A stretch of 64,000 nt of DNA, taken from positions 62,001-126,000 of the IMG/VR virus record IMGVR_UViG_3300020154_000003; one strand, written 5' to 3'. The position numbers and the translations under genes are program-made. Shown piece after piece: positions 28,065-63,677 of this stretch. A model generated the notes under the pieces. That model ran no database searches and had not been told where the DNA came from. It worked only from the letters and a program-made list of their open reading frames with translations. Every line of letters starts with the position of its first letter. The first letter of the stretch is position 1.

Positions 28065-28143
28065 TCGCGTAGGCAGGATTCGAACCTGCGCAAATCTCCT
28101 GTGTCCAAGACAGGCGGGAACGGCCAGACTTCCCCACTACACG
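28065..28143 (-). tRNA. tRNA-Pro(TGG)
   Basis: CCTGT-CTTGGAC-ACAGG; T arm GCAGG-TTCGAAT-CCTGC. Confidence 0.88.
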
Positions 28144-28151
28144 ATATAAAC

Positions 28152-28182
28152 AAAAAAAACCCAAGCTTTTGGCTTGGGTTTT
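28152..28182 (-). terminator. attenuator terminator, tRNA operon 1
   Basis: AAAACCCAAGC-CAAAA-GCTTGGGTTTTTTTT. Confidence 0.9.
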
Positions 28183-28203
28183 CTGTATTGTCCTAATTAT
28201 ATT

Positions 28204-28302
28204 TTATCTATTTAGTGGACATAGAATACAAAATCCTCCCAAGCATGAGCATTGTGGCTGATGTTGGGGGTGTTGAAGTGCTATGTTTACTAATGTTTTC
28301 AT
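28204..28302 (-). CDS. leader peptide 1 (Gln/His/Pro sensor) MKTLVNIALQHPQHQPQCSCLGGFCILCPLNR
   Basis: 32 aa ORF between promoter and terminator; CAA CAC CCC CAA CAT CAG CCA CAA run. Confidence 0.85.
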   Translation of the reverse strand: MKTLVNIALQHPQHQPQCSCLGGFCILCPLNR

Positions 28303-28317
28303 TTCGTTATTGTGATG

Positions 28318-28356
28318 CAAATGTAATAGTAAATACGTAGATTCCAAAAAAAGGTT
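28318..28356 (-). promoter_or_regulatory. composite promoter of tRNA operon 1
   Basis: AAC-N16-CGTA, overlapping GTATTTA, then TACATTTG. Confidence 0.75.
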
Positions 28357-30951: not shown

Positions 30952-31266
30952 ATGAAACTGTTTGATAAGGTTAGTAATTTCCAAGAAGGCAAGGCAAATG
31001 TCCTTTATAATGAGATCGTTGATAAATTATCAGGTGATACTACCAATGAGAAAATCAGAACCGTTTGCCTTGACATTCTTGATAAGAAAATCAAGTTTGC
31101 TAACTCGCATAGAAAAAAAGGGAAAATAAATTTGATGGAAAATGAAATTTTCTTTGCAAATACGATAATTCATAATATCTTTGCGCCAGAGTATTCGATC
31201 ATCATCTCGAACGATGAGTTCGGACTCTCAGGAAGAAAAATCAAAAATAAATGGGAAAAACTGTAA
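30952..31266 (+). CDS. hypothetical protein
   Basis: 104 aa ORF. Confidence 0.55.
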   Translation: MKLFDKVSNFQEGKANVLYNEIVDKLSGDTTNEKIRTVCLDILDKKIKFANSHRKKGKINLMENEIFFANTIIHNIFAPEYSIIISNDEFGLSGRKIKNKWEKL

Positions 31267-31315
31267 CATTTTATAATTTTTTCCGTATTTACTAACAAAC
31301 CAGATAATACATTCG
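31265..31315 (+). promoter_or_regulatory. composite promoter of tRNA operon 2
   Basis: AAC-N16-CGTA overlapping GTATTTA; degenerate TACATTCG. Confidence 0.7.
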
Positions 31316-31318
31316 AAA

Positions 31319-31435
31319 ATGAAAACTTTAATATCATCAGTAACTTTAGAAGCATTAGCATTGAACGCTATGGCGGTTGCCTTAGTGGAGGATGATATGC
31401 GTCATGGGTTTTCTGATATTATAGTTGGATTCTAA
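31319..31435 (+). CDS. leader peptide 2 (Val/Leu-UUR/Glu/Ala/Met/Asp sensor) MKTLISSVTLEALALNAMAVALVEDDMRHGFSDIIVGF
   Basis: 38 aa ORF before terminator; 18 of 20 codons (8-27) are V/L/E/A/M/D; all Leu codons are TTA/TTG. Confidence 0.85.
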   Translation: MKTLISSVTLEALALNAMAVALVEDDMRHGFSDIIVGF

Positions 31436-31458
31436 AAAAATAACAACATCAAATCAGG

Positions 31459-31484
31459 AAACCCGACCGAAAGTCGGGTTTTTT
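31459..31484 (+). terminator. attenuator terminator, tRNA operon 2
   Basis: AAACCCGAC-CGAAA-GTCGGGTTTTTT. Confidence 0.9.
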
Positions 31485-31511
31485 GTTTTTAGGAGTTCTT
31501 TGAAAATAAAA

Positions 31512-31705
31512 AGTAATCGATGCGTGGTGGAATTGGTATACACTGCCTTTGAAACGCGATAAAACACATGAGCAACCAGTAAGCTGTTGTCATGATGCGC
31601 TGAGTAGTTGGACTGTCCGATGAAATCTAATCGGGCTGCGGGGGATAAACCGTGGGTTGTTTTCAACATCCAATACAGGTTCGAGTCCTGTCGCTGAAGA
31701 TTGCT
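31512..31705 (+). ncRNA. large tRNA-like RNA
   Basis: Leu-type D arm GTGGAATTGGTATACAC, T arm ACAGG-TTCGAGT-CCTGT, closing AGTAATC/GATTGCT, ~130 nt insert. Confidence 0.55.
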
Positions 31706-39804: not shown

Positions 39805-39843
39805 AACTTTTTTTTGGAAATTACGTATTTATCTTTACCTTTG
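39805..39843 (+). promoter_or_regulatory. composite promoter of tRNA operon 3
   Basis: AAC-N16-CGTA, GTATTTAT, TACCTTTG. Confidence 0.75.
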
Positions 39844-39879: not shown

Positions 39880-39948
39880 ATGAGAACTTCAAAGACATAT
39901 AAAACTTATAAGTATCAGCCACAAGCTGAGTCGAGTTTTATTGTCTAA
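39880..39948 (+). CDS. leader peptide 3 (Lys/Tyr sensor) MRTSKTYKTYKYQPQAESSFIV
   Basis: 22 aa ORF; AAG ACA TAT AAA ACT TAT AAG TAT run. Confidence 0.85.
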   Translation: MRTSKTYKTYKYQPQAESSFIV

Positions 39949-39971
39949 AAATATCTTGCAAGGAAGACACC

Positions 39972-40004
39972 AAAAACCCGATTCAGAAATGAGTCGGGTT
40001 TTTT
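39972..40004 (+). terminator. attenuator terminator, tRNA operon 3
   Basis: AAAAACCCGATTCA-GAAA-TGAGTCGGGTTTTTT. Confidence 0.92.
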
Positions 40005-40019
40005 GTTTTATAGAGATTT

Positions 40020-40277
40020 ATGCTAGACCTGAAAAAAATAAGTGGCGAGTTTGATGCTCTCTTGAAAACCAAGACCAAAGAGGATTTGGAGAAATGGTTG
40101 CGCATGGATAAAAAGCGAATGAAAAAAGAACGAATACCGAGGAAGGATAAAAAATCCTTGAAAAAAGAAGGTGAGCGTTTCAAAAAGGAATTGAAAAACA
40201 GTCCACTGCTAAAAGGTACTGGACGATCATTTAAAACGGCAGAAGAATTTAAAAGTTATGTCAACAAAAAAGGATAA
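40020..40277 (+). CDS. Lys-rich hypothetical protein
   Basis: 85 aa, very Lys-rich. Confidence 0.55.
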   Translation: MLDLKKISGEFDALLKTKTKEDLEKWLRMDKKRMKKERIPRKDKKSLKKEGERFKKELKNSPLLKGTGRSFKTAEEFKSYVNKKG

Positions 40278-43406: not shown

Positions 43407-44315
43407 TTAATACTCACCCTTGCTTACTTGGAACACTTTAAGTCCGTTTTCTCTCCACATGTTGACAACTGGTTGACGATCCTCCAGTACTGCCCGGACA
43501 GAATATTTCCCCTTCACATTTTCCACCCACAATTCTCTCTTTACGACAATATCCTTACGGAAATCATCCATCTTACGCATCAACAGCAGGTCATACTCAA
43601 CACCATATGTTCTTAGCGACAGTTCGGTGCCCTCACGGGATTCCTCACTTCTACCAGTACAGATGATGATCGTGTAACCAGCAGCTTTGTAACAAAGATA
43701 GGTTTCGTATACAACCTGATCAAGATCATCCCGATCAACTTTATGCCAATCGAAATAACCACGCTTACCGTTCGCGTGAAACAATGTGCCATCCAGATCA
43801 ATCATAACGGCTTTAGGAAGCGCAGGATCGAATTCTGGTTCTTTGTACACGTAAGTCTTTTTAGACTGGTTTTGCAAAGCAAAGCTGTCCATTAAGATCA
43901 TGTAGTCTTCGTACATTTTCTTGATAACTTCCTCACCGACTGGTCTTTCACGAACACTGTCCCTCTCAACTGCCTTCTCGAATGAGATGTCAAATACCAT
44001 GAATTCAACGTCCGCACGATATTCCACGTACTTGATCATATCCTCAATGTATCTGGATTTGACGTGAGTAGCGTCAAGCAGGATGTTAAGTCTTCTATCC
44101 AAAGCCACATCGATGGCGTTCAAAACCAATTGAGTAATCATATCCTCAATCTTTGGTTCGCAAAATCCTTGATCCTTCAACATATAGCGGAAGTCATCCC
44201 GGTTAATTCTCACATAATCAGGGTTTTTGCGGACATATTCCTTTGACCACGTTGATTTACCTGCTGCAGGGATTCCGATAAGGATTTTGACGATTTGATT
44301 CTTTTTCTGTGCCAT
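43407..44315 (-). CDS. pseT: polynucleotide 5'-kinase/3'-phosphatase (T4 PseT/Pnk)
   Basis: GIPAAGKSTW...RINRDDFR kinase; DLDGTL, TGR, EDRQPVVNMWR HAD phosphatase. Confidence 0.93.
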   Translation of the reverse strand: MAQKKNQIVKILIGIPAAGKSTWSKEYVRKNPDYVRINRDDFRYMLKDQGFCEPKIEDMITQLVLNAIDVALDRRLNILLDATHVKSRYIEDMIKYVEYRADVEFMVFDISFEKAVERDSVRERPVGEEVIKKMYEDYMILMDSFALQNQSKKTYVYKEPEFDPALPKAVMIDLDGTLFHANGKRGYFDWHKVDRDDLDQVVYETYLCYKAAGYTIIICTGRSEESREGTELSLRTYGVEYDLLLMRKMDDFRKDIVVKRELWVENVKGKYSVRAVLEDRQPVVNMWRENGLKVFQVSKGEY

Positions 44316-51400: not shown

Positions 51401-51439
51401 AACTTTTAATTGCAAGTCTCGTATTTATGGTTACATTTG
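51401..51439 (+). promoter_or_regulatory. composite promoter of tRNA operon 4
   Basis: AAC-N16-CGTA, GTATTTAT, TACATTTG. Confidence 0.75.
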
Positions 51440-51454
51440 CAACGCATTAAAAAA

Positions 51455-51586
51455 ATGGAAAAACTAACGTCAAATATTAATCGATCAAACTGGTGTGGAA
51501 GTAATTCTATATCAGGGAATATTCTTGGCTCTACATTTAGAGGCACGAACGGGTTAATGTTTGATACAGATGGTGGAACACTGTAA
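51455..51586 (+). CDS. leader peptide 4 MEKLTSNINRSNWCGSNSISGNILGSTFRGTNGLMFDTDGGTL
   Basis: 43 aa; codons 4-33 use only L,T,S,N,I,R,W,C,G,F. Confidence 0.85.
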   Translation: MEKLTSNINRSNWCGSNSISGNILGSTFRGTNGLMFDTDGGTL

Positions 51587-51610
51587 ATAGAAGAAAAAAT
51601 ATCAAACACT

Positions 51611-51638
51611 AACCCGACCCAAAAAGTCGGGTTTTTTT
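51611..51638 (+). terminator. attenuator terminator, tRNA operon 4
   Basis: AACCCGAC-CCAAAAA-GTCGGGTTTTTTT. Confidence 0.9.
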
Positions 51639-61539: not shown

Positions 61540-61612
61540 GTCTTAGTAGCACAATTGGCGGTGCAACGATCTCTAAAATCGGAGGATGCGGGTTCGATCC
61601 CCGCCTAAGGCA
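61540..61612 (+). tRNA. amber suppressor tRNA (CTA)
   Basis: GTCTTAG/CTAAGGC acceptor; CGAT-CTCTAAA-ATCG. Confidence 0.85.
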
Positions 61613-61613
61613 C

Positions 61614-63585: not shown

Positions 63586-63658
63586 GAGAGTATGGCTCAG
63601 TGGTTAGAGCAAGGACTTCTAAACTCCTAGGTCGTGGGTTCGAATCCCACTACTCTCT
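63586..63658 (+). tRNA. amber suppressor tRNA (CTA)
   Basis: GAGAGTA/TACTCTC acceptor; AGGAC-TTCTAAA-CTCCT (C31:C39 mismatch). Confidence 0.75.
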
Positions 63659-63677
63659 CTCAATAAAATAAAAAGTT

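What the first reader, a model, noticed from the sequence alone, without database searches (positions are those of the whole stretch)
39805..39843. tRNA operon promoters stack three promoter classes
Operons 1, 3 and 4 read CGTATTTA-N4-TAnnTTTG, e.g. CGTATTTATGGTTACATTTG. That is ECF -10, late motif and Bacteroidota housekeeping -7 within about 20 nt; operon 2 has the first two plus a degenerate third. Inference: leaders are transcribed at all infection stages, leaving attenuation as the real control.
Basis: partly seen in the sequence, partly recalled or inferred. Interest (0 to 1): 0.6.

Follow-up and report, generated by a model that had tools for sequence, protein, structure and literature searches.

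The report
Nested host-and-phage promoters before tRNA operons
Each tRNA operon of this 366-kb phage of a Bacteroidota host starts with a conserved 40-base promoter that interleaves a complete host-type promoter with a complete phage-type promoter; this probably lets different forms of RNA polymerase start there, and a leader-peptide attenuator just downstream then sets how much tRNA is made.

Summary
CGTATTTA-N4-TAnnTTTG occurs exactly three times in the window and in the whole 366-kb phage genome (0 expected), each time before a tRNA operon. Operon 2 has CGTATTTA only.

The anatomy is richer than reported. All four sites, plus a fifth before a lone tRNA-Gln outside the window, read AAC-N16-CGTATTTA. 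That is the -35/-10 geometry of about 40 ECF-type promoters in this phage, which encodes two ECF-type sigma factors. Operons 1, 3 and 4 also carry TTG 19 nt upstream of TAnnTTTG, which makes a full Bacteroidota sigma-A promoter.

Related phage contigs keep both modules. They use two different interleavings, and at lone tRNAs the two modules sit about 75 nt apart. So these are two separable promoters, predicted to start about 11 nt apart.

The third, "late" layer is uncertain. CGTATTTA contains the late heptamer in register, and it is specific to tRNA loci (5/5 against 0/39). But the sites score poorly on the late model, and a dedicated promoter class explains them equally well.

Timing was not testable. 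The leader-peptide attenuators downstream are well supported by sequence.

This is a new variant of overlapping multi-sigma promoters.

The parts
39805..39843 (+). Operon 3 (Lys/Tyr) composite promoter. Elements: AAC 39805-07 (phage -35-like); TTTG 39813-16 (host -33); CGTATTTA 39824-31 (phage -10-like, contains the late heptamer); TACCTTTG 39836-43 (host -7). Predicted starts: A39837 (phage type, C+13) and A39848 (host type, G+5).
39880..39948 (+). Operon 3 leader ORF (22 codons). Residues 5-12 are KTYKTYKY. The distal part, 39926-39940, is an antiterminator decoy of the terminator's 3' half.
39972..40005 (+). Operon 3 intrinsic terminator (attenuator). tRNA-Lys and tRNA-Tyr genes follow from 40442.
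28318..28356 (-). Operon 1 (Pro/His/Gln) composite promoter. Elements: AAC 28356-54; TTTG 28348-45; CGTATTTA 28337-30; TACATTTG 28325-18. Predicted starts: 28324 (phage type) and 28313 (host type).
28152..28302 (-). Operon 1 leader ORF 28302-28204 (contains QHPQHQPQ), antiterminator decoy 28245-28228, and terminator 28182-28152. The first tRNA-Pro is at 28143.
31265..31291 (+). Operon 2 (Asp/Leu/Ala/Glu/Met/Val) promoter. Elements: AAC 31265-67 and CGTATTTA 31284-91. A decayed host -7 box (TAATTTTT, 31274-81) lies between them, which is arrangement B. There is no TTG at -33. Predicted phage-type start: A31297.
31319..31485 (+). Operon 2 leader ORF 31319-31435 (contains LEALALNAMAVALVEDDM), antiterminator decoy 31400-31418, and terminator 31457-31485.
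51401..51439 (+). Operon 4 (Asn/Phe/Thr/Arg/Ile/Ser/Gly/Trp/Leu/Cys...) composite promoter. Elements: AAC 51401-03; TTG 51410-12; CGTATTTA 51420-27; TACATTTG 51432-39. Predicted starts: 51433 (phage type) and 51444 (host type).
51455..51638 (+). Operon 4 leader ORF 51455-51586, antiterminator decoy 51549-51561, and terminator 51611-51638.
31153..31183 (+). A perfect host-type TTTG-N19-TATCTTTG lies about 100 nt upstream of the operon 2 promoter, inside a 104-codon ORF. It may replace operon 2's decayed host box, or it may be chance.

Best explanation
The stretch is a conserved composite promoter that serves phage tRNA operons. Two complete promoters are interleaved within about 40 bp.

(a) One is a host Bacteroidota sigma-A promoter: -33 TTG, a 19-20 nt spacer, then -7 TAnnTTTG. 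It is predicted to start 5 nt after the G, at A39848 in operon 3.

(b) The other is a phage-specific promoter with ECF-sigma geometry: AAC, 16-17 nt, then CGTATTTA. It is predicted to start 13 nt after the C, at A39837 in operon 3.

The -10 of promoter (b) is a variant found only at tRNA loci. It equals the CGTAT of the phage's ECF-type 'class 2' promoters fused in register to the GTATTTA of its late motif. So it may be read by one dedicated factor or by two phage factors.

Both predicted starts lie upstream of a short leader ORF. Transcription then meets a leader-peptide attenuator, which reads through only when ribosomes stall on codons for the very amino acids whose tRNAs lie downstream.

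What is shown: the motifs, their spacing, their specificity for tRNA loci, their conservation and separability in relatives, the sigma genes, and the attenuator anatomy. What is inferred: which holoenzyme uses which element, the start sites, and the timing.
For: - The exact composite occurs 3 times in 366 kb against 0 expected.
- AAC-N16-CGTAT has 60 genome sites, 44 of them intergenic. Only 5 of these read CGTATTTA, and all 5 precede tRNA genes. The other 39 intergenic sites have none (p = 9e-7).
- The phage encodes two ECF-type sigma factors, one similar to SigW/SigH.
- A viral scan for TTG-N7-CGTATTTA-N4-TAnnTTTG, with AAC not required, gave 48 sites. Twenty have tRNAs downstream and all 20 have AAC. 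None of the 25 sites without AAC has tRNAs.
- A scan for GTAAC-N6-TTG-N7-CGTATTTA, with the -7 box not required, gave 23 tRNA-linked sites. Twenty-two of them have TAnnTTTG 4-6 nt downstream, against 0 of 7 sites not linked to tRNAs.
- Seven promoters in the alternative arrangement B (host box between AAC and CGTATTTA) turned up in flanks and were not selected by any pattern. All have TTG at 19-20 nt from the box, AAC at 16-17 nt from CGT, and a leader ORF plus tRNAs.
- At lone tRNAs the two promoters sit about 75 nt apart.
- Bacterial genomes do not carry the composite before stable-RNA genes: only 3 of 120 hits have AAC and only 2 precede a tRNA.
- The host -7 box lies at -12 to -5 relative to mapped starts in Flavobacterium psychrophilum (PMC9723704).
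- Class 2 and late sites share a hard minimum of 13 nt to the start codon, with A at +13 in 30/36 and 48/57 sites. The tRNA promoters have A at +13 in 5/5.
- For the attenuators: the leader codons match the downstream tRNAs, each leader has a terminator, and the antiterminator pairings are stronger than shuffles.
Against: - There are no transcript data. Start sites, sigma usage and timing are all inferred.
- The tRNA promoters score below all or most training members of both the class 2 and the late position-weight models.
- Class 2 sites have an invariant A after CGTAT (35/35), where the tRNA promoters have T. The class 2 sigma may therefore not read them.
- Operon 2 of this phage has lost its host box, so the host module is dispensable at one operon.
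- The loci used for comparison were partly retrieved by motif patterns. Only the elements left out of each pattern count as independent.
- My gene calls are crude (longest ORFs), so the class counts are approximate.
Confidence: 0.6

Rival explanations
1. One reading: three promoter classes are stacked (host sigma-A, an ECF-type middle class, and late). The leaders are therefore transcribed early, middle and late, and attenuation is the only real control.
For: - GTATTTA(T) is the phage's late motif. It has 53 or more upstream sites, including those before the tail sheath and large terminase genes.
- It lies in the same register as the ECF-type -10, with A at +13.
- The tRNA promoters replace the class 2 invariant A with the late TTTA in 5/5 cases.
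- C is tolerated before GTATTTAT in a few late sites.
- T at the eighth position is enriched in arrangement A, although no pattern required it.
Against: - Late-model scores of the tRNA promoters are 5.0-10.0 bits, against a training median of 17.3 and minimum of 7.1. Between 95 and 438 genome sites score as well.
- The late downstream A-run is only half matched.
- In arrangement B the eighth base is G or A, not T.
- No gp55-family late sigma was found.
- The temporal classes themselves are inferred only from gene content.
Confidence: 0.3
2. A dedicated tRNA promoter class: AAC-N16-CGTATTTA is read by one phage factor. Candidates are one of the two ECF-type sigma factors or the divergent 257-aa protein with a weak Sigma70_r2 match. 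The resemblance to the late motif is then incidental, or reflects a shared -10 preference. The host sigma-A promoter is nested with it.
For: - The variant is almost exclusive to tRNA loci in this phage (5/5) and in relatives.
- It differs from class 2 at an invariant position and from late sites in its flanks.
- The phage has three sigma-like genes and at least three -10 variants: CGTTAA, CGTATAAT and CGTATTTA.
Against: No sigma can be assigned to the motif. A hybrid in exact register with two other classes is a notable coincidence.
Confidence: 0.35
3. Only the host sigma-A promoter is a promoter. AAC...CGTATTTA in its spacer is an operator for a phage regulator, or a strength-tuning spacer or UP-like element.
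For: CGTATTTA occupies the -24 to -17 spacer of the host promoter in arrangement A. Two bacterial tRNA-Arg genes carry CGTATTTA in a sigma-A spacer.
Against: - In arrangement B, and at lone tRNAs, CGTATTTA lies outside the host spacer yet keeps AAC at 16-17 nt.
- Operon 2 keeps AAC/CGTATTTA without a host box.
- The same AAC-N16-CGT geometry heads about 40 protein genes that lack a host box.
- Only 3 of 120 bacterial hits have AAC.
Confidence: 0.08
4. The similarity is a relic of recent duplication of one leader region (paralogy). There is no selection on the individual motifs.
For: The four leaders share their layout and similar terminators.
Against: - Outside the motif positions the four regions are diverged. 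Invariant columns fall on AAC, the T-run, CGTATTTA and parts of the -7 box.
- The motifs persist across many divergent contigs, with variable spacers and two different arrangements.
Confidence: 0.03

Closest known systems
Bacteroidota primary-sigma (sigma-A) promoters: -33 TTTG / -7 TAnnTTTG (Bayley 2000, Vingadassalom 2005 and Chen 2007 as cited in PMC9723704)
   Same: Operons 1, 3 and 4 have TTG or TTTG, a 19-nt spacer, TAnnTTTG, and a purine 5 nt downstream of the box. Relatives have 19-20 nt spacers.
   Different: The spacer or flank carries a second conserved promoter. Operon 2 of this phage has lost the box.
ECF sigma-factor promoters (-35 with an AAC core, -10 with CGT; Staron 2009 as cited in PMC9723704; motif SM6 of F. 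psychrophilum)
   Same: The sites read AAC, 16-17 nt, then CGT. The phage encodes two ECF-type sigma factors and about 40 promoters of this geometry.
   Different: The -10 is extended to CGTATTTA, a variant seen only at tRNA loci. The cognate sigma is unknown. Here the promoters are phage temporal-class promoters, not stress regulons.
T4-type late promoters (an 8-bp TATAAATA at -10, no -35, gp55) and T4 genes served by tandem early, middle and late promoters (textbook knowledge)
   Same: The phage's late motif aGTATTTAT has no -35, sits a fixed short distance from the start, and precedes structural genes. The large terminase is distantly T4-like. Using several promoter classes for one transcription unit is the same logic.
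   Different: No gp55-family protein was detected. Here the classes are overlaid within one 40-bp stretch, not placed in tandem.
Leader-peptide transcription attenuators (trp, his, leu, thr, pheA, pheST of enterobacteria)
   Same: Each unit has a short ORF enriched in regulatory codons, an intrinsic terminator, and an alternative pairing that the ribosome's position decides.
   Different: The controlled genes are tRNA genes of a virus. The sensed quantity would be decoding capacity for sets of 2 to 11 amino acids. No Rfam leader family matches.

Membership tests
Bacteroidota sigma-A promoter | TAnnTTTG box (-12 to -5) | tested here: met
   Exact in operons 1, 3 and 4. Absent or decayed in operon 2. 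Present in 22 of 23 tRNA-linked sites in relatives found by a scan that did not require it.
Bacteroidota sigma-A promoter | TTTG/TTG at -33 with a 19-21 nt spacer | tested here: met
   TTTG at 19 nt in operons 1 and 3, and aTTG at 19 nt in operon 4. All 7 arrangement-B promoters have TTG at 19-20 nt.
Bacteroidota sigma-A promoter | Initiation by host sigma-A holoenzyme 5 nt after the box | not testable with these tools
   Start positions are only predicted from PMC9723704.
ECF-type sigma promoter | AAC-core -35 and CGT -10, separated by 16-17 nt | tested here: met
   Met in all 5 tRNA-linked sites of this genome. Met in 20 of 20 tRNA-linked sites in relatives found by a scan that did not require AAC.
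ECF-type sigma promoter | A cognate ECF sigma factor is encoded | tested here: met
   Two proteins of 187 and 190 aa carry Sigma70_r2 plus r4 and the ECF profile. One is similar to SigW/SigH. Which one reads CGTATTTA, if either, is unknown.
This phage's class 2 promoters (AACAtTT-N12-CGTATAAT) | A after CGTAT (35/35 sites) and a model score within the class range | tested here: not met
   The tRNA promoters have T at this position (5/5). Four of the five score below every training member.
This phage's late promoters (aGTATTTAT-N4-AA) | The 8-mer GTATTTAT, no -35, AA at +13/+14, and a model score within the class range | tested here: inconclusive
   The heptamer is present in 5/5, the eighth-position T in 3/5, and A at +13 in 5/5, but +14 is C in 4/5. 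Scores of 5.0-10.0 bits fall at or below the bottom of the training range.
Leader-peptide attenuator | A short ORF with regulatory codons, a terminator, and an antiterminator overlapped by the ORF end | tested here: met
   All four operons have these features. Duplex energies are -11.9 to -20.1 kcal/mol. Shuffles reached the observed value in 1, 1, 2 and 25 of 300 trials. Function was not tested.

The most novel reading that the evidence does not exclude
Each phage tRNA operon is a self-contained homeostat. Its promoter can be read by every RNA polymerase holoenzyme present during infection: host sigma-A, a phage ECF-type sigma, and the late machinery. That promoter keeps feeding a leader-peptide attenuator. 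The attenuator opens only when ribosomes stall for lack of exactly the tRNAs encoded downstream. The four operons partition the twenty amino acids among four sensors. This would be ribosome-mediated attenuation controlling tRNA genes, in a virus, and it is conserved across a large clade of uncultivated Bacteroidota phages.
Probability: 0.3. Interest if true: 0.85.

Novelty: new variant of a known kind. Interest (0 to 1): 0.55.

Why it matters
Phage-encoded tRNA arrays are common, but how they are expressed and regulated is largely unknown. This work defines a compact, conserved promoter cassette specific to tRNA operons in a clade of jumbo phages of Bacteroidota. The cassette appears to be readable by the host polymerase and by phage-redirected polymerase, and it is coupled to an attenuator.

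It provides three things:
- Concrete sequence definitions of three phage promoter classes and their probable start sites.
- A natural test bed for sigma-factor takeover in a phylum with unusual promoters.
- Portable parts for engineering Flavobacteriia and Bacteroidia: nested promoters, strong terminators and amino-acid-specific attenuators.

If initiation is indeed constitutive across infection, tRNA supply in these phages is set by feedback from translation itself.

Tried and rejected
I did not try another route, so there is no read evidence.
- Near and distant DNA searches of cultured phage records found nothing. The large terminase is only 26% identical to Flavobacterium phage immuto and other T4-like phages, so no cultured model is at hand.
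- The idea that the composite is a host stable-RNA promoter copied by the phage is rejected. Of 120 bacterial hits, only 3 have AAC and only 2 precede a tRNA.
- A T4 gp55-type late sigma was sought with phrog_234 and phrog_12791 and found no match. An earlier guess, phrog_1024, rang nowhere and says nothing. The 257-aa sigma-like protein has no relative among solved structures.
- Rfam finds only tRNAs in 26-64 kb and no known leader family.
- Literature searches found no description of leader-peptide control of phage tRNA genes or of this promoter. The library is incomplete, so this is weak evidence of novelty.
- Co-variation between the tRNA -10 and the late motif could not be used. The relatives G001-G003 share the same late motif.
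- Plain minimum-free-energy folds of the whole leaders show only the terminator form. The antiterminators were found by duplex search.

Full report
CONTEXT. The window is bases 62,001-126,000 of a single 366,038-bp virus record with 36% G+C, judged complete by CheckV. It carries 52 of the genome's 54 tRNA genes. The large terminase is distantly T4-like; the best cultured match is a Flavobacterium phage at 26% identity. No cultured phage shares DNA similarity. Start codons lack Shine-Dalgarno sequences, and Bacteroidota-type promoter boxes are present. Both point to a Bacteroidota host; this is an inference.

OBSERVATION. CGTATTTA-N4-TAnnTTTG occurs at 28337..28318 (-), 39824..39843 (+) and 51420..51439 (+). 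That is 3 matches against 0 expected, and there are no others anywhere in the genome. Operon 2 has CGTATTTA at 31284-31291 with no box after it. The given coordinates hold operon 3's copy.

PROMOTER CLASSES OF THIS PHAGE. K-mer enrichment in regions upstream of ORFs, followed by inspection of instances, gives three phage-specific classes.
- Class 1 is G(T/C)AACCTT, about 13 nt, then CGTT(A/T)A. It is clustered before small genes at 156-176 and 203-212 kb.
- Class 2 is (A/T)AACAtTT-N12-CGTATAAT, that is AAC-N16-CGTAT. It has 60 sites, 44 of them intergenic, and precedes RIIA and polynucleotide kinase among others.
- The late class is aGTATTTAT-N4-AA, with no -35 element. It has at least 53 upstream sites, including those before the tail sheath and large terminase genes.

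The genome encodes two ECF-type sigma factors of 187 and 190 aa, one of which resembles SigW/SigH. It also encodes a 257-aa protein with a weak region-2 match. No gp55-family protein was found. Host-type TTG-N18-20-TAnnTTTG sites are about 7 times denser in intergenic than in coding DNA, with 16 intergenic sites. Their timing is inferred from gene content only.

ANATOMY OF THE tRNA PROMOTERS. All four operon promoters read AAC-N16-CGTATTTA. So does a fifth site at genome 362,187 (-), about 105 nt before a lone tRNA-Gln. Among the 44 intergenic AAC-N16-CGTAT sites, CGTATTTA is found at these five and at none of the other 39 (p = 9e-7). Operons 1, 3 and 4 also have TTTG or TTG exactly 19 nt upstream of TAnnTTTG. 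That is the full Bacteroidota sigma-A promoter. In Flavobacterium psychrophilum the box lies at -12 to -5 relative to mapped starts (PMC9723704).

Class 2 and late sites share a register. The distance from position 0 (the C of CGTAT, or the base before GTATTTAT) to the start codon has a sharp minimum of 13 nt. The base at +13 is A in 30/36 and 48/57 sites. This implies leaderless transcripts that start at +13. The tRNA promoters have A at +13 in 5/5. The predicted starts in operon 3 are therefore A39837 (phage type) and A39848 (host type). Both lie upstream of the leader ORF, which starts at 39880.

IS EACH ELEMENT SELECTED? Three scans of public viral contigs each left one element out.
- TTG-N7-CGTATTTA-N4-TAnnTTTG gave 48 sites. 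Twenty-three have AAC at 16-17 nt, and 20 of those are followed by tRNAs. None of the 25 sites without AAC is followed by tRNAs.
- GTAAC-N6-TTG-N7-CGTATTTA gave 33 sites. Of the 23 followed by tRNAs, 22 have TAnnTTTG 4-6 nt downstream, against 0 of 7 others.
- In the first scan (AAC-N16-CGTATTTA-N4-TAnnTTTG), the tRNA-linked hits all have TTG 19-20 nt from the box.

I also located promoters from tRNA positions alone in three jumbo relatives of 357-371 kb. These show the same operon types and two arrangements.
- Arrangement A is the one seen in operons 1, 3 and 4 here.
- In arrangement B the whole host promoter is shifted upstream, so that TAnnTTTG lies between AAC and CGTATTTA.

Seven B promoters that no pattern had selected all keep TTG at 19-20 nt, AAC at 16-17 nt, a leader ORF and tRNAs. 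Operon 2 of this phage is a decayed B: TAATTTTT at 31274-81 and no TTG. At lone tRNAs in this phage and two relatives, the phage-type promoter sits about 75 nt upstream of a separate host-type promoter.

Two class 2 promoters of protein genes also carry a host box in the B position. In bacterial genomes the composite is at chance level: of 120 hits, 3 have AAC and 2 precede tRNA-Arg. The four regions of this phage are diverged outside the motif columns, so recent duplication does not explain the pattern. Together these results show two separable, selected promoter modules.

THE THIRD LAYER. In favour:
- CGTATTTA contains the late heptamer in exact register.
- The tRNA promoters replace the class 2 invariant A (35/35) with T.
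- The eighth-position T is enriched in arrangement A.

Against:
- On position-weight models the tRNA promoters score 5.0-10.0 bits on the late model, whose training median is 17.3 and minimum 7.1.
- They score 9.7-21.4 bits on the class 2 model, whose training range is 17.1-33.3.
- In arrangement B the eighth base is G or A.
- The variant is nearly exclusive to tRNA loci, as a dedicated class would be.

I therefore hold the dual reading (host plus phage) as well supported. The triple reading gets about 0.3, and a dedicated single phage factor about 0.35. The latter two are alternatives within the dual reading.

DOWNSTREAM CONTROL. Each promoter is followed by a short ORF whose middle is rich in the amino acids of the tRNAs downstream.
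- Operon 1: QHPQHQPQ before Pro, His and Gln tRNAs.
- Operon 2: LEALALNAMAVALVEDDM before Asp, Leu, Ala, Glu, Met and Val tRNAs.
- Operon 3: KTYKTYKY before Lys and Tyr tRNAs.
- Operon 4: a 29-residue run of T, S, N, I, R, W, C, G, L and F before the matching tRNAs.

A strong intrinsic terminator follows each ORF. The distal part of each ORF can pair with the 5' half of the terminator. Duplex energies are -13.4, -20.1, -11.9 and -12.4 kcal/mol, and shuffles reached these values in 1, 1, 2 and 25 of 300 trials. A ribosome that reaches the stop codon would cover this segment. A ribosome stalled at the regulatory codons would leave it free to block the terminator. That is classical attenuation logic, here applied to tRNA genes. 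Relatives have the same design. No Rfam family matches, and no paper found in the library describes it.

VERDICT. Overlapping promoters for several sigma factors are a known kind of arrangement. This tRNA-specific cassette, with two conserved interleavings and coupled to leader-peptide attenuators in a clade of Bacteroidota jumbo phages, is a new variant.

LIMITS. There are no transcript data. Gene calls are crude. The comparison loci were partly selected by pattern. The assignment of sigma factors to promoter classes is open.

Noticed in passing
window 28152-28302 (-), 31319-31485, 39880-40005, 51455-51638: Leader-peptide attenuators precede all four tRNA operons. The regulatory codons match the tRNAs downstream, and the four operons divide the amino acids among them. 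An antiterminator decoy lies in each distal leader ORF. The design is conserved in many viral contigs. I found no description of it in the literature searched.
   Followed up: partly
window 61540-61613 and 63586-63659: Two tRNAs with anticodon CUA (amber suppressors, labelled Pyl by ARAGORN) lie at the end of the operon 4 array. I did not examine whether late genes carry in-frame TAG. Standard-code ORFs already cover about 92% of the genome.
   Followed up: no
window 31520-31700: A stretch of about 180 nt lies between the operon 2 terminator and the first tRNA-Asp. It has tRNA-like ends (a D-arm-like 5' part and a T-arm-like GGTTCGAGTCC 3' part), but neither ARAGORN nor Rfam calls it a tRNA. 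A similar stretch is present in relative G003 upstream of its Asp tRNAs.
   Followed up: no
window 40020-40277: An 85-codon ORF lies between the Lys/Tyr attenuator and the first tRNA-Lys. It is very lysine-rich. It could be coincidence or a second Lys-sensitive element.
   Followed up: no
genome 362,006-362,206 (outside the window; G000:C1): A lone tRNA-Gln(UUG) has the tRNA-type phage promoter (AAC-N16-CGTATTTAT, with TACCCTTCG in place of the -7 box) about 105 nt upstream. A separate host-type TTG-N19-TATATTTG lies just before the tRNA, and there is no leader ORF. Relatives G002 and G003 have the same layout.
   Followed up: partly
whole genome (e.g. G000:C1:143,473 (-); 204,331 (+); 74,124 (+) = window 12124): Many class 2 and late promoters sit exactly 13 nt before the start codon, with A at +13. 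This implies numerous leaderless mRNAs. Leaderless mRNAs are rare (about 5%) in Flavobacterium itself according to PMC9723704.
   Followed up: partly
genome 156-176 kb and 203-212 kb (outside the window): There is a dense array of G(T/C)AACCTT-N13-CGTTAA promoters, often right after terminators, each before a small gene of unknown function. One of them precedes the 187-aa ECF-type sigma gene at about 175.3 kb. How the cascade is bootstrapped is unclear.
   Followed up: no
window 43407-44315 (-) and genome 323,214-327,431 (-): A polynucleotide kinase gene sits behind a class 2 promoter. A 1,404-aa protein with tRNA nucleotidyltransferase and RNA ligase domains sits behind a late motif. Together they form a tRNA repair and maturation kit alongside the tRNA arrays.
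   Followed up: no
window 31153-31183: A perfect host-type TTTG-N19-TATCTTTG lies inside a 104-codon ORF, 100 nt upstream of the operon 2 promoter. That promoter has lost its own host box.
   Followed up: no
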